Source: Laetmonice hystrix
Lineage: Eukaryota
Direction of reading: 5' to 3'
Length of the DNA: 64,000 nt
Assembly (NCBI GenBank): GCA_965235115.1
Contig: OZ249437.1
Location: 35,898,001-35,962,000 of the forward strand
Shown: piece after piece, positions 45,701-60,200 of the stretch
How the letters are laid out: each line of letters opens with the position of its first letter
How positions within the stretch are numbered: position 1 is the stretch's first letter
The notes under the pieces: generated by a model
Database searches by the model: none
What the model was told of the DNA's origin: nothing
What the model saw: the letters and a program-made list of their open reading frames with translations, nothing else
Position numbers and translations under genes: made by a program

Positions 45701-48415
45701 CAGGGGCCGGTTTCTTTGTCCCGTTTGATACCCCTAAATAGTCACCCTCATTGCCTCGCCGTTTTTTGTTTTTCTTTTGTTGTTGTTTTATGGCTGAAGT
45801 TAGGCAAGGGACTTGCCCAATGACTGAGAAACCGCGGCCCCTGGACTTTCACTAGCCGACTGCAATCCCATACATAACACTCTATTCTGGCATAAGCATA
45901 AAAGACCTCTAAGGAAAGTCTCTTTATTTTACTTATATTATTATTATAAGAAGGTCCTTTTGATCAGGCTGAATACTTTAAGAACATTAGCCACAATGAT
46001 CCCAGGGAAGTGCCAGGCAGCCTTCGGTAAGTTGGCTCTGCCATAAGGCATTCTTATTCAGACACCCACCAGTAGCGGGTGATCCCACCAGAAGGCATTA
46101 CGGTATACACACCTACCGATAACCGGAAGGTCCTGTAAATGCTCCAAGGTATTCCAGACCACGATCTTTCATAAGTGGACTGTCCCCTCAGTGCCTCTGC
46201 CCATTTTCTCTTCCGGGTGGCCATTAAACACCTCATTGTCATCACACCCAACATTCCTATGGAGATGAGCTAAGTCGTCGATGTTATGTGCTTGCTTTCT
46301 ACCAGGGAATGGTCATTAGACAGGACGGAGCCCCCGGGGCTTTCCACATCCTTGACCGCCAGGTACACACACACACCTACTGACCAGTGACCAACACTAC
46401 TTCCTCAAAGCTTTCTTACTTTCAAATTTACTTAAACCATACCTTAAATTGACAGTCCTAGTTTTGTGCTATGTGAAGCCCTAGCAACACCTACTGGGTG
46501 TCCCAAAAGTTACTGTGCGGTCAAATTATTATTATATTCCAGTGGACATTAACTTTTGGGACACAATGCCTTACAAATATTCCTCAATGCTGTCACAGTT
46601 ATTGCTACCCCTACATAACATTTCCCGACTTCACAGGTTTGGGGAGAATCCCTTGCAGTCACCACCTCAAGGCCACCAATCGGGATATGTTTATCTACCA
46701 GGGTTCCCCACGTTTATGCAATTTATGTATAAATTCAGTGTACATGTACATACATTTATGATAGTGGTTTCCTCAGCAATAATATTGACCGTATACACCA
46801 CGTTTTTACTGGCAAGGTTTGATCGGAGGACTGAATGCCTGTCTGTCTAACGTGGCCAGTCCGGTGACGTGACGTCCTTGTCACGTCCCTGTGATAGGCC
46901 TACTGTACTGAAAACAACCCTGATTGAAACCTCCCACACAAGAGTCCCAAAGTCTTACATGTCCAACAGGCTAGTCAATTGATGGATCACGTTCTACGTT
47001 GGCTTTATCAAAGGAAATAGTGTCCTCAAGTGCCAGCCTGACCAAACCCCAATTTGCGACAATGACAATGTCGGATTTTTCGGTCGGTGCAAAGAATGAC
47101 GTTAAATTCCTCCATGTTTATGGTCTGGGTTAAAAGTGTACGGAACATGACGGTTACTAAACGTTACGAGTGTGTCCAACGGAGTCTCTACCCGTACTCG
47201 AATAGTGATCATAGTTCATGCCTCGTGCTCATGTTTCATAGAAGATACCTGTGGTTTCACAACAATGGACAGGTTACATGTACATGGAATCACTTCAATG
47301 AGGAAATGTTTTCTTCAACGTTCAGGTCAAACTCTTATAACAGTTACATATAAAGTTAACTTTGACTTTATAATGATACTAAAGGTATCAAATTATGAGT
47401 GACACGTTGTAAAACATTGTCATGACTTTTTACAAACACTAAAGTCTTGATAAGAACGGTATCTTTTTCTGAGCACAACCAATGCTTTGATAACACATTC
47501 CATAGTTCGCCAGTTGTATCAGAAAATAAATAAATTATTAACAGTCTTACTCTTTTGTTTCCCTCTCCTAAGTTCACATGGATCTTGAACCCTGCCATGG
47601 AAGAATCCACAGTTAGGATTTCTTTAAACCCCCCTCTAGTTTGTCTAATAAACCCAGCAGCTCTCAGGTACCAGCATAGAATGATTACATCCGGTTATAT
47701 GTTCACCTGATGGATTACCTATATCGATGACAGGTCAATTACTCTATGTCACGATTATCAGGATTTTTTTTGTCTGGAGCCAGTGAATGACAGCTCGATT
47801 ATCATAACAGATGGACTCCTACCTGACCATCAATGCGACTTTCTTACTGTTGTTACAATATTACTTTCTCCAACAAGAAATGTCGAGGAAAAGGCCACCT
47901 CAATACATACGTCACTATTGTCCACCTCTATGCAACTCAATGTATTCAGAAAACAGACCTGTCTAGTGTTTGAGTGTTGACTTCATATATCATTTCACAT
48001 TTACCACAACGGTGTGAAGCCGGAGTTATACGACATTGATATACCCGTCGTATTGTGTTTGTAAGAGTACCAATATTGACACTACAAGATCGGACTGGCA
48101 ATGAGGCAAGCTGGTCTCATCATTTTCACGGAGGTACAATCCACTCATCATCCGCCAAAGGCCTTTACCTTTTACTAGTCAGACAGACAGACAGACGATT
48201 AGCCAACAGGACGGTCTTGATTTAAACGATTCATAATGAAAAATTCACTTTGATACTTACTCAATTTGCCTCTCAAGGAAATCGACGCCTATTGTTTTCT
48301 TGTAATCCTTGGTGAAGATTCCCTTGCAGTACCGCTGGATCATGCTGCTCTTCCCTACTGCTCCATTGCCAACGATAACGACCTTGATGGCCGTTTCTAC
48401 CTCCTCCTCCCGCAT
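25159..48415 (-). CDS. RAB23: Ras-related protein Rab-23, complete CDS in 7 exons
   Basis: Exons (minus) 48415-48261, 35804-35719, 26705-26629, 26457-26378, 26120-26038, 25585-25502, 25286-25159. Translation: [147 protein letters not shown]. It has all G boxes, the RAB23-diagnostic N-terminus and a C-terminal CaaX. The first coding exon starts at a splice acceptor at 48484, so a non-coding exon lies further right. Confidence 0.96.
27974..28080. repeat. About 50-bp tandem duplication
   Basis: gccaagg..tacttcttacttaaa..acaaagttttcaactgaagtttttgcc occurs twice. Confidence 0.8.
30201..32980. mobile_element. Foldback-type TA-flanked element with about 390-bp imperfect TIRs carrying L1/Tx1 cargo (copy 2, complete)
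   Basis: 30201-30589 is the reverse complement of 32581-32980 (a few substitutions, one deletion near the outer end). Ends: TA-gtctaggtga / cacccggtc-TA. The interior 30779-32580 matches 1-about 1810. Confidence 0.8.
30924..32526 (-). pseudogene. Decayed L1/Tx1 ORF2 fragments (copy 2) with hAT-like MITE at 31421-31693
   Basis: Same motifs and same lesions as 146-1757. Confidence 0.8.
32995..33060 (+). other. tRNA-like segment (SINE head or tRNA pseudogene) inside the HINE
   Basis: A-box-like tggcgatggtc and B-box-like gggatcaatcccgg, followed by a T run. The cloverleaf is not convincingly intact. Confidence 0.45.
44091..45689 (-). mobile_element. Helentron-associated HINE/DINE-1-like element with internal about 465-bp tandem core repeats
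   Basis: End 1: aaacaagctt-gtg-aagctt hairpin + tatagccccc. End 2: (GGAC)n at 45615-45650 + agccccc-cgttgt-gggggct + A run. The core units at about 44545-45005 and about 45006-45470 are clearly homologous (ccaagatggcc...tatatgacttcctatctatcaataata...ttgcaccgttttcgagatat). Confidence 0.8.
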
Positions 48416-50460: not shown

Positions 50461-51404
50461 GGACCTGCATTTCGGAGACTCAGGTCCGTCGGCCTGCATT
50501 CCAGGACTTGAAAAGCTGTAAACGTCAAGGTTGAAACGAAAATATAAGTACTTTAAAATACTGTGCTTTATTTTTTAACTATTCCACTAAAAATTCAAAA
50601 CCATTTCATTTCGCTGTCTTCCTCGCTGATCACTAAAAAGTAAAGAAAACAATTACGTTTTGAATGAAAGATTACCATACAGATTTCTACATATTTTTAA
50701 TATATTTTTGTGTCGACTTTCTTCAAGAAACAACCCTTTGTCTCTTGTCTGCTGTTGTGTGAACTGAATCCCACTCCTATTGTTTGCATTAGTCCAAAAT
50801 GATGCCTGTATCGTACCGTTAAAACCAATCCAATTAGAAGTGTCAACCACCTCAGGTCCATATGCACCAGGGCGGAACAACCTGGTGTCATCACATTGTA
50901 AAACATGTATATTTAACCATTACCTTTGAAGATACACAATGACACAGGACTGGACACGACCAACAACCCCGCCACCACGCAAGTGGTTCTCCCGAAATAA
51001 CTCCTCTTATGTTGAGGCATTGTCTAAGCCGGGAAATGACATGTTAATTCCCTTTAACCTCTACATCTTTCAGTTGTACAAGTACATGTATTTTCTAGTA
51101 TTTTCATGTTATGGAGAAATAAGCCAGTTCATTAAGTATACCTCCACAAAGTTTATGTTTCATATATTAAAATTATACGAGACTTACCTTGGTACAAGTT
51201 GAAGTAGAATTATAATTTTACCGAGGACAACACGTAGTGTTGTAGGGAATATCTGAGAAGGAGAGCGCGTGCGCGGGGAGACGGCAGACTTGAACTAAGT
51301 GCGAGTTGAAGCAAAGAATCCCCCTAACTGTACGAGACTGACCTTGTGTAAGTGTCCAAGTCCCCAGTATCAACCCTTTGAGACCTGGGGTGGGTGGGAA
51401 AGGG

Positions 51405-51539
51405 CAGATATTCCCTACAACACTACGTGTTGTCCTCGGTAAAATTATAATTCTACTTCAACTTGTACCAAGGTAAGTCTCGTATAATTTTAATATTTTA
51501 CCTCGGACAACACTGACGTGTTTCCGGAAATATCCGAGA
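51405..51539. repeat. DIRS internal complementary region (ICR)
   Basis: 51405-51494 is the exact reverse complement of 51166-51255 (90 nt). 51495-51539 is the exact reverse complement of 56451-56495 (45 nt). Together they spell the predicted circle junction. Confidence 0.95.
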
Positions 51540-51621
51540 CTTTTAGAGCTTCTTTGCGTCTTAACTCGCTTACGGGCATGACAACAAGACAAATGTATTA
51601 CTGCATACAGAACACACTTTA

Positions 51622-52893
51622 TTATGTCAGTGCTTCATTTAACAATCTCTTCGCAACCTCTTGGTCTTCATCAATATCCTTATTATAAAACAGGGCGAAT
51701 GACCGTACATTTCGCCATCTAGCCTGTTTCAAAATCTGTCCTATCGAAGCTCCCAATCTATGGGCCGCAGACGCTGACGCCCCTCTAGTAGAGTGGGATT
51801 TATACACCGAAATATCAATTCCCGCCATGCTAAGCACAGCTAGCGTCCACCTCGCTAAACTGTCTCTCGATATAGCCCTATGTGGCGCTCGATAACTTAA
51901 TAACAATTGACTCTCCCCTTTCCTGAATCCTCTCGTTTTTTCCAAATACTGTCTCAGTGTTCTAACCACACAGACTGTGGGACACTTGTCAAACGATTGG
52001 AGGATAATTGAGTCCAACCTATCCCCTAATCTGTTATGTTTCAGTAAACATTTCATCTTAAACACTACCTTATGCTTTGATTTAACGAGTCCATCTATAT
52101 TTAAATTTACAACGGTTTGGCCCCTCTGTGAGGTCACCAGTAACAGCAAAACTGCAAGTTTTAAGGATAGATATTTTAAGGATAAATCCTCATTGCGACC
52201 CCATTGCTTGAACAACTTAAAAACCTTTTTGACATCCCAAAAAGAAGAATAACGAGGTTTTGGCGGGTTCCTTTCATAAACCCCTTTAATTAGCCTACAC
52301 ACCAACGGGTGTTTCCCAATACCATAGCCGTCCATATCCGGTAATACAACCGCTAAAGCCGATCTGGCAGCATTCAGGGCCCCATAACCCAGGCCCCTGT
52401 CTGCTAAACCTCTAAGAAAAGCACACACTTGGGGTAAGGTTGGCTCCAACAAAGTGACTTTATATTGGCAACAGTAGGTAGCCCATTTCTTTAAATAAGT
52501 TGTGTAAAGTTTCTTGGTGGAGTTTCTCCATGATGCCATAATGAGTTCAACTGTTTTCTTATCAAAACCAGCTTTTAACAACTTTTTTCCCAAAAAAGGT
52601 ATGCCACCAAGGGGCAGCTGTGTAACTTTTCTTTGTTTCGTGGCTCCCCGTTTGGTATTAGATTGTGTGGCCTGCTTCTGAAGTACAGTCGTCGTGACGC
52701 CGCCTTCTGGACTGTTGCAAACCACGGCTGCGTCGGCCACCACGGAGTGATCAGGATTCCTCGTGTTCCGTCCGCCAACATCTTGCTGGCGACCCGGCCT
52801 ACTAGACTGAAAGGCGGAAAAATATACATAAAACCTTCTGACCAGTCTAACGTGAACGCATCTGTTTTCCATGCTTCGGGATCTGGTCTCCAT
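51622..52893 (-). CDS. DIRS tyrosine recombinase (YR), 423 aa, open
   Basis: N-terminal SAM-like helix STKKLYTTYLKKWATYC and catalytic residues R (TSQRGQ), K (LKHNR), H-x-x-R (SHSTRG), W (ARW) and Y (ALFY). The first 319 nt overlap the MT-coding frame. Confidence 0.95.
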   Translation of the reverse strand: METRSRSMENRCVHVRLVRRFYVYFSAFQSSRPGRQQDVGGRNTRNPDHSVVADAAVVCNSPEGGVTTTVLQKQATQSNTKRGATKQRKVTQLPLGGIPFLGKKLLKAGFDKKTVELIMASWRNSTKKLYTTYLKKWATYCCQYKVTLLEPTLPQVCAFLRGLADRGLGYGALNAARSALAVVLPDMDGYGIGKHPLVCRLIKGVYERNPPKPRYSSFWDVKKVFKLFKQWGRNEDLSLKYLSLKLAVLLLLVTSQRGQTVVNLNIDGLVKSKHKVVFKMKCLLKHNRLGDRLDSIILQSFDKCPTVCVVRTLRQYLEKTRGFRKGESQLLLSYRAPHRAISRDSLARWTLAVLSMAGIDISVYKSHSTRGASASAAHRLGASIGQILKQARWRNVRSFALFYNKDIDEDQEVAKRLLNEALT

Positions 52894-53759
52894 GATACAA
52901 ATTTATCTAGTTTTTTATTCAACCTTGACGCAAACAAGTCTACATCTGGCTTTCCAAAGGCCTTACATATTCTATCAAATATCTGTTTACCGATTTCCCA
53001 TTCCGTTTCGTCCATAAATTTTCGGGAATGTAAATCTGCGATCTGATTATTAATACCAGGTATGAACGCAATCGTAATCCAATTGTGTGCCTGCTCTGCC
53101 CAGTTCCAAATCTCCCGGGCTACCCAATTGCACTGAGGCGACCTTACACCGCCCATATTGTCTACATACGCTACCGCTGTGGTATTATCTGTTAACACCT
53201 TCACGTGTACCCTCGTTTCATGACACAAACTCTTCAGTCCATACAATATTGCTAGTAACTCTAAAACGTTAATGTGTTGCCGACTTTCGTCAGCTGACCA
53301 CCGGCCCCCAGTCTCCACTGAGTCCGTGTGAGCCCCCCATCCCAGCATCGAGGCATCAGTGCTGACCTCCATGGTGATTTTAGGGGGTCTTATACTTTTA
53401 ACTGCAGCTGGTAGTGCAGATAGCCACCACCTAATGTCTTCCTTTGCCCTGTCTGTGAGCACCATGGTATGATCAAAATTCCCCTTCGCCTCTCGGAGGG
53501 CCATATTTTTGTCAATCTCTAAAAATTTTATATGTGCAGCTCCGTACTGTACTCCCGAGGAATACGCTACCATCAAACCAATAAGTCCAGCTACCTCGCG
53601 TATAACCACACGTTTGCTTTGTAGGACTTGTAATGATGCTCTGCAAAATTTGTCCTTTTTATCTTGTGTAAGACTAACCGTCATCGAGGATGTGTCCAAA
53701 CTGAACCCCAGAAAGGTCAACTTCTGCGTTGGGGTCAATACTGACTTGTCAGGATGCAC
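52575..53759 (-). CDS. DIRS pol, C-terminal part: RT thumb, RNase H and DNA N6-adenine methyltransferase-like domain
   Basis: HPDKS..TFLGF; RNase H STDASMLGWG / HINVLELLAI / TDNTTAVAYV / IADLHSR; MT-like DLFASRLN...YIFPPF...PWWPTQPWF. Joined to the RT ORF across a +1 frameshift at the A8 run 53760-53767. Confidence 0.92.
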   Translation of the reverse strand: MHPDKSVLTPTQKLTFLGFSLDTSSMTVSLTQDKKDKFCRASLQVLQSKRVVIREVAGLIGLMVAYSSGVQYGAAHIKFLEIDKNMALREAKGNFDHTMVLTDRAKEDIRWWLSALPAAVKSIRPPKITMEVSTDASMLGWGAHTDSVETGGRWSADESRQHINVLELLAILYGLKSLCHETRVHVKVLTDNTTAVAYVDNMGGVRSPQCNWVAREIWNWAEQAHNWITIAFIPGINNQIADLHSRKFMDETEWEIGKQIFDRICKAFGKPDVDLFASRLNKKLDKFVSWRPDPEAWKTDAFTLDWSEGFMYIFPPFSLVGRVASKMLADGTRGILITPWWPTQPWFATVQKAASRRLYFRSRPHNLIPNGEPRNKEKLHSCPLVAYLFWEKSC

Positions 53760-54480
53760 AAAAAAAACCCAAAGTTTGAAATAAATTACACAATGAGTTT
53801 ATGGAATCCCGACATTCCTGAAAAGAATCTGCAATAACGAAAGAATCATCAATATAGGGGAAAGCCTCGTTACCTGCCTCCCTCAAATGTGCAAATGCTG
53901 GGCTCAGAATTTTCGTAAAAATCCTCGGGGCACAGGCTAGACCATTTGGCATACCTACATATTCATAAATAACATTTTCAAACCTGAACCTTAAAAACTT
54001 CCTATGTTCTTCACGTATATTCACAGTGTAATACGCGTCTGATAAATCTACTGAACCGAGCCAGGCCCCTGGTCTAATTAAGTCCAAAGCAGTCTGTAAT
54101 GAGGTCATCTTAAAATGTTCATATTGGACAAACTTATTTAAGTTAGTCAAATCCAAAATCAGTCTATGGCCCACTGGCTTGGGTCGTAGAAAAATATTCG
54201 AAATAAATTGCCCATCCAGTGGCTGTGCTGGTCTGATGACACCTTTTTTAACCAACTTGTTAAGTTCTATCCTCAGACAGTGACGTTCTGCTTCACATAT
54301 TCTAAATGGGTGCGGTTCCCTTTCCTGTACAGGCTCCCCTTCCATAAAGGGAATACGTACTCCCTGTACCATAGAAAGAATCCAGGGGTCCCTCGACAGT
54401 TTCAGCCACTCACGCACACATCTAGCAATGTTTCCTGCCTTAAACTCAAGATCAGGCAAAGCGTCAACAGAGGTACCCAC
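53749..54480 (-). CDS. DIRS pol, N-terminal part: reverse transcriptase (frame stays open upstream to about 54590 without an ATG)
   Basis: FISNIFLRPKP..RLILDLTNLNKFV..HFKM..GSVDLSDAYY..GMPNGLACAPRIFTK..YIDD. Confidence 0.93.
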   Translation of the reverse strand: MGTSVDALPDLEFKAGNIARCVREWLKLSRDPWILSMVQGVRIPFMEGEPVQEREPHPFRICEAERHCLRIELNKLVKKGVIRPAQPLDGQFISNIFLRPKPVGHRLILDLTNLNKFVQYEHFKMTSLQTALDLIRPGAWLGSVDLSDAYYTVNIREEHRKFLRFRFENVIYEYVGMPNGLACAPRIFTKILSPAFAHLREAGNEAFPYIDDSFVIADSFQECRDSINSLCNLFQTLGFFCAS

Positions 54481-54485
54481 TTGCT

Positions 54486-55778
54486 CTAATTCCGGGTCCC
54501 CTTCCGCTGAAAATCCGGACGTGGAGCCGGGGGAGCGCCTACTGCCGCAGTAGGTGGCTGCCGCTGCCTTGACCTCGCCCTGGGGTCATACTGTTGTCCT
54601 GGCTGTCGATATGCATAGTGCATGCCATATGGATAGGCTGGCCTCATGTGCTGGTACCCAAATGACCTTTGGTACGGCGCTACCCGATAGGTTGGGTATG
54701 TCACCATACCGCGTGTCCGGCCTCTCCCGGACCCTACCTGAGCAGGAAGTCTTACCTTTCCTGCCGACTGCTTCATCATCTTACCAGACAATTTCTGTGC
54801 CGCCTCACAATGTTTGGCCGCTTCCTCGATATTTCCTCCAAAAAGCCACTCCGGCGACTCCCCTGAGAATTTGCTCAACGCTTTAGCATAGACACCTTGC
54901 ATGCCCGATCTAATGTTCTCTTTCCGTTTCGACTTCAGGCCATTGCTTACCAAGGCTAACGCCTTAATGGCATCTAGTGCATTATCAGCTAGATTATCCA
55001 GTCCTGTGTCTGATTGTCCCCTGTCAATCATTAAAGCTGCTATCGGTGTTAATGCTGACAAGGCTGCAGCAACTCCCGCCTGAAGCTTTTTTATAGTAGA
55101 ATCGGTGGATCTTGCCTGTGGATTCATCCCAGTATAAATTTCCATTTCCACCTGTGGTATAGTTAAATGAGGAATGTTCTCTGGTGGAGGATACTTTGAT
55201 GCAATATCCTCTAATTCTGTCCCTCCGGGTGAAATAAAACAGTTTTCCACAATTTCCGCTAAGCTGGGGTGAACTGGTTCGCCCTTTCTGGAGGCTTCTC
55301 CTACTTTTTCTTTATTCTGTTCAATTAGCATCGCCAATTTCCCTTTCGCAAGCTGTATAGGTACTTCCCGAGTTGGAGCTGGAGAGGATTCTGCACGTGG
55401 CCTATCATCTGATGAGTAGGAACTGTGAAGGTCAGGCCCCATCCCGCCTGCTGTATCTTCCGACTCATACCCACTCCAGGTATCCCACTCCGGGAAAAGC
55501 GTCGGCATAGGCATAGGCGGCGGCGCAAAAGGTAACCCGTACTGAAACGGGTACGGAGCGTGAAAAAACTCAGATGGCTGAGTTTCTTCCATTTGTATTG
55601 GCTGTGCCTGGGTCACAGTCTGCGGCTCCTCTGCAGTACTTAGGGAGGCTGAAGCGGACGTAGTTGGTCCTTGCTCCAATTCTTCATTTTTCTTATTTCT
55701 TGTCTTCGCCTGCTTTTTCTCCTTTGTAGACCCTTCTACAGCAGTGTCTGCAACCTTTCTTCCCTCTTTCTCGGGCAT
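54486..55778 (-). CDS. DIRS gag-like ORF1 (probable start ATG 55778, MPEKEGRK...)
   Basis: Open frame of about 430 codons with an acidic/proline-rich N-terminal half, a helical core (PHLTIPQVEMEIY...KLQAGVAAALSAL) and an R/G/Y/P-rich tail. The track start at 55826 runs through a polypyrimidine splice acceptor. Confidence 0.85.
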   Translation of the reverse strand: MPEKEGRKVADTAVEGSTKEKKQAKTRNKKNEELEQGPTTSASASLSTAEEPQTVTQAQPIQMEETQPSEFFHAPYPFQYGLPFAPPPMPMPTLFPEWDTWSGYESEDTAGGMGPDLHSSYSSDDRPRAESSPAPTREVPIQLAKGKLAMLIEQNKEKVGEASRKGEPVHPSLAEIVENCFISPGGTELEDIASKYPPPENIPHLTIPQVEMEIYTGMNPQARSTDSTIKKLQAGVAAALSALTPIAALMIDRGQSDTGLDNLADNALDAIKALALVSNGLKSKRKENIRSGMQGVYAKALSKFSGESPEWLFGGNIEEAAKHCEAAQKLSGKMMKQSAGKVRLPAQVGSGRGRTRGMVTYPTYRVAPYQRSFGYQHMRPAYPYGMHYAYRQPGQQYDPRARSRQRQPPTAAVGAPPAPRPDFQRKGTRN

Positions 55779-55780
55779 AT

Positions 55781-56349
55781 CTGTCCGGAAGAAAAGAAAG
55801 GAAATAAATACTCGGCCTATAACCAAGCCAACTCAAAACCAAGTTAAAAATACCATTCGTATTAATCAATACAGAGTGTTGACAAACCCAACCGACCGTG
55901 ACGAACCACCGAACCAATTCACACCTGGGTCGGTTTGACCGGTATGGCACACGACACGGTCGTATTGAAATTGACCAACTCCTTGTCAAGACACTGTGAC
56001 TAAACCTGAGACACCCAGCGGGTGTTCTCGTCACGGCAAAAAAGATTTATTGAGTTAATAGTTTATCCCGGACCACGTCCGTCTATAAAACTCATCAAAA
56101 TGCCGTAAAGGCTTACAAATGAACGAAGGCAGCGCCAACGTTCCGTGACAAAATGCCTTACAGGCTTACATGTGAACGAAGGCAGCGCCAACGTTCCGTG
56201 ACCTATCTGAGACAACGCCAGCGGGAAGCCTCGTCACGACAAATTCTTAGGGTTTAAAACAATAAACCAGACCACGTCTGGTTAATAAACCCGTATGCCT
56301 TAATGGCTTAACTCCAAAAGGAGTAAAACTTCAACCAAGGAACACTCAC
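55781..56349 (-). other. Candidate spliceosomal intron in the DIRS 5' leader
   Basis: Donor CAG|GTGAGT at 56349. Acceptor tttatttcctttcttttcttccggacAG at 55781, 2 nt before the gag ATG. Confidence 0.7.
56108..56202. repeat. About 54-bp direct repeat inside the DIRS leader intron
   Basis: ggcttaca..tgaacgaaggcagcgccaacgttccgtgac occurs twice. Confidence 0.85.
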
Positions 56350-56821
56350 CTGTAACGCATTCAAAAACCAGCGCGAGTGCAGTTCAAACACGTCCGCCCC
56401 CGGCAAACACTACACACGAAACTGCCGTCTCCCCGCGCACGCGCTCTCCTTCTCGGATATTTCCGGAAACACGTCAGTGTTGTCCGAGGTAAAATCATAT
56501 ATATAATTGTGTGTAAAGCTGTTAAGGATGCAGCAGTATGGTACATGTTATGTTGTGAAGTTAGCAACCATCATTATGACCAACAGTATGTTATAAATCC
56601 ATATCTTCATATTTTAGTATAAAAAGACTTTAGAAGTGTCTCTGAACATCAGTCAGTGACAACCTTACTGTATATATTCCGCCAGGACAATATTTCCTAA
56701 TACCAGAAGATGTTATGACGGTCAATTGATTTATTATTTTTATTATCATTTCTTAACCATCGTGTTTGGTATCATAATAAAGGAAATAGCAGTATGAACA
56801 ATTAGAACACCATATTTTAGG

Positions 56822-57284
56822 TGTAAGTTAAATATAAAAAGAGTTACCCAATATCTGTAGGTTGATGTGGTGAGGGCAAGGTTCGTTCCGGTGGCTGGTC
56901 AGGGCTAATTAGTAAGCTCCGCCCCATTTACTACCCTAGAGTATATATACCCCCTTAGTTAGCTAGACAGAGAGACATGATAGGGAGATCCAGGGAGACA
57001 CACACAGATAGAGACATAGGCAGAGATACAGAGAGAGAGTTCTGAACCAGCCACCCACGCAGCCTGGCCATGACCATCAACCACCGTAACTCCTGGTAGA
57101 TGTTTTGCCTTTACTCGAAGTATTATGGCTGGACTATTCTAAATCTTATTTTACGTTATTTGGGTATACTACCCACTGGTATGTTCGAACCATGTCGGCA
57201 TACCCCACTTTACTTGTCTTGGCAATCGCCACCACTGTTCAGCCACCAAGACAGACATCCTAGAATAAACTACCAACAACCACA
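56822..57284 (+). mobile_element. Possible solo LTR
   Basis: TG...CA ends, TATA-like gtatatatacc (about 56941) followed by an AG-rich tract, and AATAAA about 20 nt before the end. No TSD found. Confidence 0.3.
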
Positions 57285-60200
57285 TTTTTAATCAAACCCC
57301 CAATCATTGTGTTATTTTATCAATATGCTAGCTTTCCCCCCATTAGAAAACCTCTCTTATAAGTCGCGTGGAGTTGGGTTGTGGTGCAGAGCTAATGCCA
57401 TGTTAGATCTGTCACCCACCGAACGACACGACGAAACCTCTGTGCTCCCTGCCCAATGACATTTCTAACCCGACGCGTTAAATAAATGCCAGTTACGGTA
57501 ACAGAAAGGAACAATAAACTGACCTCTCTGAGCCCGACAGTTTATTAACATACAACAGTTACTCTCATTCTCTATGTAAAATGTATGTATACGGAGTGTA
57601 CATAAATCATCCATTCCGCAATATTTGTTCTCAGCAAATCCTCGGTGAAAACACAACTTGATAGCAGTTGATATACTAGGCTTCAGATCATCGACAGAGA
57701 TATAAACTGGTTTCAGTTACATAGTACGGACATATCTCTCTAAAGGTGCTGTAAGCTTTATGGTGGAGACATCATCCCTAAGAAATGGTCCCAGACAGGC
57801 TATAACCTAGCTATGTAAACACTAAATGCGATACAACGTTTACTAAGAGGATAAAAAACCGCAGCCTCTTTCTTACTGCTCATACATCCTGGCCCTTAAT
57901 ATAAACAACTTTCACTGAACTTCACAGAGACTGTTGTATTGGTATGTAATAATAATACATTTCCAAAACTCCCATACTTCCCATCTAAGCACTCCAGTAA
58001 ACTATATCAAAATTACATCCTACAATTAACAAACAGCTTTTGTCTATCTTCTCATCATGTCTTCCCTCAAGTCAAAATATCCCAGGTGGAGACAATAGGT
58101 ACAAGGCTCTTCCTTTATCCTAGGTGCAACTGACCCAAATAGCATTCCCACAAAACACCACCTGGTGCACACCAATTTTCTCATGGTCACAGCCCGACCA
58201 CTGCCACTCATGCCTCTGCGCCTATGCTAAACCTAATGACTCTTCCCTTGCGATGACCATCATGTATTCTTTTTGTGTCAAACATAAACAGTGAATACGA
58301 CATTAATAATTCAGGAAATTGAACCAGTTTTTCCTGCTTTTAAATGCATCACTTGATCATAATGGGTCACGTGCAGGTCACCTAAAATGGGCAATTTGTC
58401 TTCTATTGTCCTTCGTTGTACAAACTCTGCCATATAGAGAGACGACCGCCCTGTAAGTGGGGTTAAGACCCTTTCTAAGATTCTTTGCAGGTATATCACC
58501 CCAGACGGGGTATAAACCAACTGGGTTATCATGTACCATAAAACTAAAGCCTTTCCTGTCAGTTCAGGGTCAGGTTCACACGAAGGTACTCAGAGCTCGC
58601 CAACACACAATGGGAACTGAAAGCAAGGTGTTTACAAGTTGACCATTATAATGTAGGACTGATCCATTATTTGGACACCGTAGACGCCCATCATGATCCC
58701 AAAGTACTATAACTGATGCTATAGGCCGAATCCGTATGAAGCTGTGGTGCTTCCAGTCTATCCCTTGACATTCACCCTGGGATGTCTGTCTGAGAGCTCC
58801 CTAGTTGGAGATAATGAAGGACAAACCTTGGCACTCCCGTTCAGAGATACCTACCATACAGCTCTGCCTCTGCTAAAAATGGACCTTCTGTTGTAAGCAG
58901 AGATCGCACAGCGTGTATTTCTCAATGAGATGAAATCGACCGCTAAAAGGTGACGCACACAGTACAGAGCTCCAACGTGCGGCGATGAGGACTTCAATAT
59001 GTTGTTTATGTACAAACCGTCAAGTTGAAAGTTACATTCCGACAGAAAGTTCATGTCTCCACGCCGTCAATTAGTGGTTAACCACAATCGTTCACTCTAC
59101 CATTCACAGGCTGTTCCTAACCACTCACTGACCATTACTGACCATTACAGAATATTTCAGAAGAATGTTGGACACATCACGGTAGGACGTACATCATATC
59201 ACAGGGTTCGGTTGTCACAACGTAATGGTGAAGTTAAACGGAAATATACATAGTAATCACATTTGGTGATGTCTCAAAGGTGTTCAGAGAAAATTATTTT
59301 AAGACTATGATTTTCTCAAATTATAATTTTAAAAAACTGTCAGTTCATGTTCCCTCCAATTTCAATTTCAACGTGTTCGTTAATAGCTGCATTGCCTAAG
59401 GCAGAGAGCTTGTCACAATCAAGGGAGGTAAAAAATTTCCATCTGAAACTTTTTTCACATTAAGTGTGAATGCCAGTTTGGCATCGGCTGGACTGTGATG
59501 ACGGGATGAGCGCTGGCGCTTGGAGGCACAGACAGGCTGTTATAACATGACAGCTGCCTGTAGGGCCCCACGTGGCACAACATATTTAGTGTTTGTAAAT
59601 CTATGGGTGAACAGACTGACCTCTGGCGTTATGATACATGAGCACGAAAAACAAAAACAACGGAAAATTCTCATGAATAATTAGACATGATCACGAGTCC
59701 CTCTATAAGTATTACCAACATTTCACAATGACAGTGACATGATTCAACATTCCTTTGTTGTGATATTTATATAAGGAAGGGTTCTGAGTAAAAAGAAATG
59801 AGCAAAAATCATAAAATGGCTTATGATGGAGGCAAAAGTTCATCCAATTTCAAGGCACTTCATTAATTCACATATGAGTGACTACACTCACAATATAGGA
59901 ATGACTGGAATGACTGAAAAACTCAACAAAGCGGGTTTATGGAGGGTTGACGACTGGGAACACGTCTCCCTGGATCAGTGAATGTTAGATGTTAGAGAAT
60001 GTCGGAGCTGAGACAGAGCCCCCCACCCCACCCACCCACCACCACCACCACCCCCACTGGTCATAGTTACAGTTCTACATGCCGTCCACACCTGAGCTGT
60101 TTCCCTGGTCTTTACTCTGGTCATACATTCCGGGGATAGGAAGAAAATCTTCATCGATTCTCATCACGAGTTGGCTGTTGATGTAAACGGGAGAACATAC

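What the first reader, a model, noticed from the sequence alone, without database searches (positions are those of the whole stretch)
51166..56495. Essentially intact, very young DIRS1 element just upstream of RAB23
Seen: all DIRS modules are present, gag and YR are fully open, pol has only one 1-nt frame break, and the ICR matches both termini with no mismatch over 90 and 45 nt. Known: DIRS1 elements replicate through a circular intermediate whose junction is templated by the ICR and integrate by YR without a TSD. Inference: this is a recent, possibly polymorphic and possibly still competent copy, 2.7 kb from the RAB23 first coding exon and on the same strand.
Basis: partly seen in the sequence, partly recalled or inferred. 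Interest (0 to 1): 0.7.

Follow-up and report, generated by a model that had tools for sequence, protein, structure and literature searches.

The report
Young DIRS1 retrotransposon with split polymerase
This is a real, very recently inserted jumping gene of the DIRS1 type upstream of RAB23. Its reverse-transcriptase gene is split by a one-letter frame offset shared by all four young copies, so it is probably not self-sufficient even though the family has jumped recently.

Summary
A minus-strand DIRS1-like tyrosine-recombinase retrotransposon occupies 51163-56495. It has inverted terminal repeats and an internal complementary region that matches the 3' end over 92 nt and the 5' end over 45 nt, both without mismatch. 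gag and the recombinase gene are open. The RT/RNase H/methyltransferase gene is split once, inside a T8 run at 53760-53767.

"Recent" is strongly supported. Two other copies on the same chromosome are identical over 5.3 kb, and a fourth is 99.8% identical. All four have unrelated flanks. Paralogues of the 1.3-kb repeat that hosts this copy give the empty site: a clean insertion at an AT, with no target duplication.

"Competent" is doubtful. All four young copies share the frame offset, and the genome holds no unbroken copy of this subfamily. Older copies, a sister family and foreign homologues all read through that site in one frame. So broken copies have moved at least three times. My preferred explanation is polymerase supplied in trans, for example by an intact sister DIRS1 family of at least 22 copies whose ends are 83-90% identical. 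The rival is slippage on the T8 run.

Polymorphism could not be tested: only one sample was available and the flanks are repeats. This is a new member of a known kind.

The parts
51163..56495 (-). Whole DIRS1-like element, counting the junction trinucleotide at each end (sense strand: starts ATT, ends ATA). One AT of the two comes from the target.
56451..56495 (-). 5' terminal 45 nt, matched without mismatch by the first part of the ICR
   Evidence: I3
56422..56472 (-). Left ITR core, 90% complementary to the right ITR core
   Evidence: I2
55779..56450 (-). 5' leader, with a 53-nt tandem duplication at 56096-56201
54486..55778 (-). gag-position ORF, 430 aa from the first ATG, open. It is 31% identical (E 1e-49) to the ORF1 of a related element in another assembly. 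No Pfam family.
53752..54585 (-). pol, first open stretch (-1 relative to gag, 97-nt overlap): RT fingers/palm with YIDD at 53856-53845
53760..53767 (-). T8 homopolymer in which the pol frame is offset by one nucleotide. Shared by copies A-D.
52578..53798 (-). pol, second open stretch: RT end, RNase H-like domain, Dam-like methyltransferase
51622..52893 (-). Tyrosine recombinase ORF (423 aa). It overlaps pol by 318 nt in the -1 frame. R257, K285, H367, R370, W393 and Y403 are invariant among homologues.
51405..51539 (-). Internal complementary region: the reverse complement of the 3' end joined to the 5' end (the circle junction)
   Evidence: (I1, I3)
51237..51287 (-). Right ITR core
   Evidence: I2
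51164..51255 (-). 3' terminal 92 nt (right extension plus the edge of the ITR), matched without mismatch by the second part of the ICR
   Evidence: I1
50800..51162 (.). Left part of the ~1.3-kb host repeat unit that the element interrupts
56496..57438 (.). Right part of the host repeat unit
48260..48415 (-). RAB23 first coding exon (at least this much), ATG at 48415

Best explanation
The stretch is a genuine DIRS1-like retrotransposon that integrated very recently into a solo copy of a 1.3-kb repeat, 2.75 kb upstream of the RAB23 start codon and on the same strand.

Its cis parts are complete: the ITRs, and an ICR that spells the junction of its two ends. gag and the tyrosine recombinase are open. 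Integration was a conservative recombination at a 2-nt AT shared by the element's end-to-end junction and the target, with no duplication.

The polymerase gene (RT, RNase H, MT) is split by a one-nucleotide offset in a T8 run, and all four young copies carry the same offset. The copy is therefore not autonomous as read.

The subfamily still moved at least three times while carrying the break. I infer that it used polymerase made elsewhere. The most likely source is the intact sister DIRS1 family in the same genome, whose ends and junction are far better conserved than its genes. An unbroken sibling missing from this haploid assembly is the alternative source.

Shown: the anatomy, the identity of the copies, the shared break and the empty site. 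Inferred: the source of polymerase and the replication route.
For: - Anatomy.
- Copies: B is identical to this copy over 5330/5330 nt. C is identical except for the boundary base. D has 9 substitutions and a MITE insertion. All four have unrelated flanks.
- Shared break: only these four copies, plus two copies at 91% and one short 86% fragment, cover the break region in the whole assembly, and all four young ones have the T8 form.
- One frame elsewhere: the ~90% copies and five sister-family copies read through the homologous site in one frame. Most foreign homologues are single pol ORFs of about 630 aa.
- Persistence of the break: with the old copy as outgroup, 6 of the 7 differences between this copy and D that could be polarised are derived in A/B/C. 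The broken lineage therefore kept evolving and moving after D split off.
- Candidate helper: the sister family has at least 22 copies, about 99.4% alike. One of five fetched copies has gag, a 633-aa pol and YR all open, with PF00589 at 4e-11.
- Conserved ends: identity to the sister family is 83-90% at the ends and ICR, against 50-65% elsewhere.
- Empty site: paralogues of the host repeat read ...TTTCAT-AT-CATATAT....
- Literature: DIRS-1 RT acts in trans and the ICR is essential (PMC7192593). The ATT end trinucleotide and 3-bp junction rule are described in PMC3266345.
Against: - No experiment or RNA data link the sister family's proteins to this family's RNA.
- gag is only about 40% identical between the families, so co-packaging is not assured.
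- The element keeps its own open gag and YR. Three of the four derived coding changes in its lineage are synonymous. That hints it still depends on its own genes, which a pure passenger would not.
- The break lies in a homopolymer, which is also the ideal place for slippage to bypass it.
Confidence: 0.55

Rival explanations
1. The element is autonomous after all. A small share of transcripts (polymerase slippage on the T8/U8 run) or of ribosomes (a shift on UUU UUU U) joins the two pol stretches and yields enough RT/RNase H/MT for a low rate of transposition.
For: - The offset sits exactly in an 8-nt homopolymer, where the P-site Phe tRNA can re-pair perfectly.
- The run is specific to the young subfamily. 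The old copy and the sister family have no long T run there.
- No unbroken copy of the subfamily exists in the assembly, yet the broken lineage kept moving.
- The low copy number (4, against at least 22 for the sister family) fits a throttled element.
- Compensatory frameshifting at homopolymer indels is known, for example in herpesvirus TK (PMC5009743). RT itself makes +1/-1 indels at U runs (PMC5737442).
Against: - The site is not conserved in any relative, so it is not an established recoding signal.
- The next codon is an ordinary sense codon (UGU) and I looked for no stimulatory structure.
- There are no RNA data.
Confidence: 0.3
2. The T8 run is a homopolymer-length error of the assembly, and the element is fully intact.
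For: Homopolymer indels are the commonest long-read error. The four runs available come from the same sample as the assembly and may be the same data.
Against: - The same length appears in four separately assembled copies.
- Run X1 holds a contig that matches 53719-53992 exactly, at a depth of 95, about four times the rough per-copy depth of 20-24. The only different-length contig listed in table 8 has 19 mismatches, so it belongs to an old copy.
Confidence: 0.07
3. The identical copies arose by segmental duplication or gene conversion, not by transposition.
For: Three identical copies lie within 10 Mb on one chromosome.
Against: Identity stops exactly at the element's ends in all four copies and the flanks are unrelated. 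Paralogous empty sites show a precise insertion.
Confidence: 0.02

Closest known systems
DIRS1-like retrotransposons of animals (superfamily DIRS1, order DIRS; survey in PMC3266345)
   Same: gag, RT/RNase H/MT and YR genes. ITRs, plus an ICR that overlaps at a short junction. A right extension. Size of 5.3 kb against a survey mean of 5.16 kb. ATT at the start of the element. No target duplication. A long pol/YR overlap.
   Different: pol is split by a frame offset shared by every young copy. Only 2 of the 3 junction nucleotides match the target in three of the four insertions (ATT at the start, ATA at the end).
Dictyostelium DIRS-1 (PMC7192593)
   Same: The ICR spells the joined ends. The ICR was shown to be essential and RT was shown to act in trans, which is the precedent for helper-dependent copies.
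   Different: Different gene order and ORF overlaps. DIRS-1 piles up in centromeric clusters, whereas these copies are dispersed in gene-bearing DNA.
PAT and Ngaro elements (the other YR retrotransposons)
   Same: YR in place of an integrase, and integration at a short homology.
   Different: They carry split direct repeats, not ITRs plus an ICR. Ngaro also lacks the MT domain. Here ITRs plus an ICR are present.
Compensatory frameshifting at homopolymer indels (for example the herpesvirus thymidine kinase G run; review PMC5009743)
   Same: A one-nucleotide indel in a homopolymer inside an essential gene of a mobile or viral genome, in a lineage that still propagates.
   Different: No product or altered transcript has been observed here. 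The resemblance is one of position only.

Membership tests
DIRS1-like retrotransposon | Tyrosine recombinase with the catalytic R-K-H-R-(H/W)-Y residues instead of a DDE integrase | tested here: met
   242 homologues, most with PF00589. R257, K285, H367, R370, W393 and Y403 are invariant. The profile matches Cre/Tre at E 4e-6 over the HxxR...W...Y region. The sister family's YR, 58% identical, scores PF00589 at 4e-11. The protein itself gets no Pfam hit.
DIRS1-like retrotransposon | Reverse transcriptase with the YxDD motif | tested here: met
   RVT_1 at E 9.6e-14, above the cut-off. YIDD at 53856-53845.
DIRS1-like retrotransposon | RNase H domain after the RT | tested here: inconclusive
   RVT_3 scores 21.3 bits against a cut-off of 21.6. 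RT_RNaseH has E 0.007. Some homologues carry PF13456 or PF17917.
DIRS1-like retrotransposon | Methyltransferase (Dam-like) domain at the end of pol, which separates DIRS1/PAT from Ngaro/VIPER | tested here: met
   Dam PF05869 at E 5.6e-6 and 26.6 bits, just under the 28.1 cut-off. The sister family gives the same hit, and PF05869 is on record for several homologues.
DIRS1-like retrotransposon | Inverted terminal repeats plus an internal complementary region matching both ends, which separates DIRS1 from PAT/Ngaro | tested here: met
   92 nt and 45 nt at 100%, in the order expected for the reverse complement of the 3' end joined to the 5' end. ITR cores 90%.
DIRS1-like retrotransposon | Insertion without target-site duplication, at a short sequence shared with the junction | tested here: met
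   Paralogous empty sites carry a single AT where the filled site has AT at both ends. All four copies are preceded by AT. The sister family behaves alike.
Autonomous (self-sufficient) element | Uninterrupted pol reading frame | tested here: not met
   One-nucleotide offset at 53760-53767 in all four young copies. Relatives are in one frame there.
Programmed recoding site | Shift-prone sequence at the frame junction | tested here: met
   T8 run.
Programmed recoding site | Conservation of the shift site among related elements | tested here: not met
   Absent in the ~90% copies, the sister family and foreign homologues.
Programmed recoding site | Trans-frame product, or transcripts with an altered run length | not testable with these tools
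   No run on record as RNA. All runs are stored as contigs, which drop rare variants.

The most novel reading that the evidence does not exclude
A lineage-specific T8 tract inside the RT gene acts as a recoding or slippage valve. The element looks broken in DNA but makes a trickle of full-length polymerase from slipped transcripts or shifted ribosomes. It therefore stays autonomous at a throttled rate, which would be an unreported expression strategy for a tyrosine-recombinase retrotransposon.
Probability: 0.25. Interest if true: 0.6.

Novelty: new member of a known kind. Interest (0 to 1): 0.3.

Why it matters
DIRS1 elements are the least understood retrotransposons, and their replication has been tested only in Dictyostelium. 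This animal genome holds two co-resident DIRS1 families with the same architecture. One is intact. The other has a polymerase gene broken in every young copy yet has clearly been moving. That offers a natural helper/passenger (or slippage) system in which to ask which proteins act in trans and which end sequences are recognised.

The paralogous empty site also shows that 2 nt of identity with the junction is enough for integration.

For RAB23 itself nothing is shown. The insertion lies in an older repeat 2.75 kb upstream of the start codon.

Tried and rejected
- Presence/absence at this site. Only four runs hold the stretch, all from one sample and all stored as contigs. The contig that skips the element (51163 to 56494) has a depth of 400-930 and carries the paralogues' variants, so it comes from about 20 paralogous repeat units and not from an empty allele. 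No verdict on polymorphism.\n- Expression. No run is on record as RNA. A small run of unknown kind (X4) holds pieces of 51690-54017 only. Part of these come from a degenerate fragment on C7 at 13.78 Mb, whose internal deletions match the joints 53354>53802 and 52766>53170. This was not usable.\n- Pfam on the YR, whole and in parts, found nothing. Membership had to be shown through homologues.\n- Pfam and the protein atlas on gag gave no named family.\n- A recurrent break at the same pol site in shorter foreign homologues was not found. Their starts are scattered, and those that span the site read through it.\n- The organism was not identified.
Full report
WHAT IS THERE

The element lies on the minus strand.

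Repeat search finds three inverted pairs:
- 51164-51255 with 51405-51496 (92 nt, 100%).
- 51495-51539 with 56451-56495 (45 nt, 100%).
- 51237-51287 with 56422-56472 (51 nt, 90%).

Read in the sense direction, the block 51539-51405 is the reverse complement of the 5' terminal 45 nt followed by the reverse complement of the 3' terminal 92 nt. That is the reverse complement of the 3' end joined to the 5' end, which is the definition of a DIRS1 internal complementary region (PMC3266345). The third pair forms the ITR cores, and the 3' end carries the long right extension. The window holds no N.

CODING CAPACITY

Stop-to-stop open stretches:
- gag: 55832-54489.
- pol, first part: 54585-53752, in the -1 frame relative to gag with a 97-nt overlap.
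- pol, second part: 53798-52578.
- Recombinase: 52902-51625, in the -1 frame relative to pol with a 318-nt overlap.

Pfam gives RVT_1 at 9.6e-14 on the first pol part. On the second part it gives Dam-like methyltransferase at 5.6e-6 and borderline RNase H models.

The recombinase ORF has no Pfam hit of its own. Three other lines support it:
- It has 242 homologues, most with PF00589 on record.
- The R, K, H, R, W and Y catalytic positions are invariant.
- The family profile matches Cre/Tre across the HxxR...W...Y region at E 4e-6.

The gag-position protein has no named family. It is 31% identical (E 1e-49) to the ORF that stands before the RT in a related element from another assembly.

THE BREAK

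The two pol stretches overlap by 47 nt around a run of eight T at 53767-53760, 26 codons after YIDD.

COPIES AND AGE

The window is C2:35898001-35962000 of a 627-Mb assembly.
- Copy B (C2, 42.65 Mb) is identical over 5330 of 5330 nt.
- Copy C (C2, 32.63 Mb, opposite orientation) is identical except for the boundary base.
- Copy D (C6) differs by 9 substitutions and carries a 724-bp MITE.

Identity ends exactly at the element's ends and the flanks are unrelated. These are therefore separate insertions, not duplications.

With no difference in about 16 kb of summed sequence, the 95% upper bound on divergence per copy is about 1.9e-4 substitutions per site (my calculation). At an assumed rate of 1e-9 to 1e-8 per site per year, that is under roughly 20,000 to 200,000 years.

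A search with the 261 nt around the break finds only these four copies at 100%, two at 91% (one old copy that lies in an inverted duplication on C7) and one fragment. The subfamily is therefore small, and every young member has the T8 form.

IS THE BREAK REAL, AND IS IT OLD?

The ~90% copies and five copies of a sister family read through the homologous site in one frame, and they have no long T run there. Most foreign homologues of the second pol part are single ORFs of about 630 aa, and those that span the site are continuous. The offset is therefore a derived feature of the young subfamily.

In the contigs of run X1, a piece matches 53719-53992 exactly at a depth of 95, about four times the rough per-copy depth of 20-24. 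The other-length piece listed there has 19 mismatches and belongs to the old copy. An assembly error is thus unlikely. The caveat is that the runs come from the same sample as the assembly.

With the old copy as outgroup, 6 of the 7 differences between this copy and D that could be polarised are derived in A/B/C and one is derived in D. The lineage therefore carried the break while it fixed several substitutions and produced at least two rounds of daughters. Of the four derived coding changes, three are synonymous. That is suggestive of constraint but not significant.

INSERTION SITE

The flanks 50800-51165 and 56494-57438 are the two halves of a repeat unit of about 1.3 kb, with at least 20 paralogues at 94-99%. 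In the paralogues the halves are joined through a single AT (...TTTCAT-AT-CATATAT...). The contigs of the runs show the same joint, 51163 to 56494, with 2 nt fitting either side.

The filled site has AT at both ends, and the centre of the ICR has the same AT. In the sense direction the element starts with ATT, the commonest start reported for DIRS1-like elements (PMC3266345). It ends with ATA. Two of the three junction nucleotides were therefore shared with the target. Copies B and D show the same pattern, and copy C shows GTT...ATT. The sister family also inserts at AT. This fits conservative recombination by the YR between the end-to-end junction and a short matching target, without duplication.

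Because the empty-site contig is explained by paralogues, it says nothing about an empty allele.

THE SISTER FAMILY

At least 22 copies (a lower bound) of a second DIRS1 family share the same plan. One fetched copy is 5260 bp, with ITRs and an ICR of 91 + 54 nt. The copies are about 99.4% alike.

One of five fetched copies has gag (478 aa), a continuous pol (633 aa) and YR (370 aa, PF00589 at 4e-11) all open.

Identity between the two families:
- 3' terminal 92 nt: 90%.
- 5' terminal 45 nt and the ICR: 83%.
- Leader, gag and YR: 50-65%.

The parts that the machinery must recognise are thus the best conserved. gag-to-pol is -1 in both families, and a GGATTTTCAG motif at the end of gag is shared.

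HOW IT MOST LIKELY WORKS

Shown: a cis-complete element, recent integration by a duplication-free mechanism, and repeated mobility of copies whose pol is split.

Inferred: replication by the DIRS route. In that route an RNA lacking the extreme ends is copied to cDNA, the ends are restored on the ICR, and the YR integrates the product. Only the need for the ICR and the trans action of RT have been shown, and only in Dictyostelium, where most cDNA is linear and single-stranded (PMC7192593).

I prefer trans supply of RT/RNase H/MT as the source of polymerase (0.55), from the sister family or from an unbroken sibling absent from this haploid assembly. The rival is slippage on the T8 run (0.3). Slippage is mechanistically plausible (PMC5009743, PMC5737442), and it is favoured by the absence of any unbroken sibling and by the hint of continued constraint. 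No relative conserves the site, however.

COMPARISON AND NOVELTY

Every structural criterion of a DIRS1-like element is met except RNase H, which is borderline. The element fails only the test of autonomy. It is a new member of a known kind.

The earlier notes of this scan on the same genome were leads only. They cover a DIRS pair that looked heterozygous near CaMKIV, protein-less YR-type elements without a known helper, and an insertion site mimicking a circle junction. They agree that YR elements are currently active in this genome.

RAB23

Exon 1 (ATG at 48415, minus strand) is confirmed as Rab-23-like at E 3e-25, against 1e-9 for other Rabs. It lies 2.75 kb from the element's 3' end, on the same strand. 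I searched this exon alone and joined no spliced model. No effect on the gene was tested.

Noticed in passing
G000 C2: 32.63, 35.95 and 42.65 Mb (loci L003, L002, L001): The three identical copies all lie within 10 Mb of one 54.7-Mb chromosome in a 627-Mb genome. The post hoc chance is roughly 5e-4. Possible readings are local re-insertion, or very young low-frequency daughters still linked to their source. With n = 3 this stays unexplained.
   Followed up: no
G000 C7: 9339799-9348200 (minus) and 9458444-9465394 (plus); host-repeat paralogues at 9272053 (minus) and 9533037 (plus): The ~90% old copy and its neighbours occur twice, in mirror symmetry about 9.4026 Mb. This is an inverted duplication of at least 260 kb, or a fold-back assembly artefact.
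   Followed up: no
G000 C6:18821830-18822553 (in L004): Copy D is interrupted by a 724-bp MITE with terminal inverted repeats of about 32 nt and a 5-bp duplication (CCAGG). A cut-and-paste family has therefore been active since that copy inserted.
   Followed up: partly
window 50800-51165 and 56494-57438: The host of the element is a solo unit of a ~1.3-kb repeat with at least 20 paralogues at 94-99%. Elsewhere, several stand as direct pairs 3.8-3.9 kb apart, which looks LTR-like.
   Followed up: partly
window 54489-54585; L034 4123-4200: The gag-pol overlap is -1 in both DIRS1 families, and a GGATTTTCAG motif just before the gag stop is conserved between them. This bears on the separate frameshift note on this window.
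   Followed up: partly
window 51690-54017: A small run of unknown kind (X4, 59 M letters of contigs) holds pieces of the YR-to-RT half only, and none of gag or the leader. One 749-nt piece differs from all assembled copies at 52356 (A>G). If the run is RNA, this would be expression of some family member.
   Followed up: no
window 51689, 52926, 54834: At sites where A/B/C differ from D, the contigs of the runs often carry the D-type (ancestral) letter at full depth. The animal may hold more D-type copies than the assembly shows, or contig building may simply have dropped one variant.
   Followed up: no
window 56096-56201: A 53-nt tandem duplication (92% identity) lies in the 5' leader. The sister family also has tandem repeats in its leader.
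   Followed up: no
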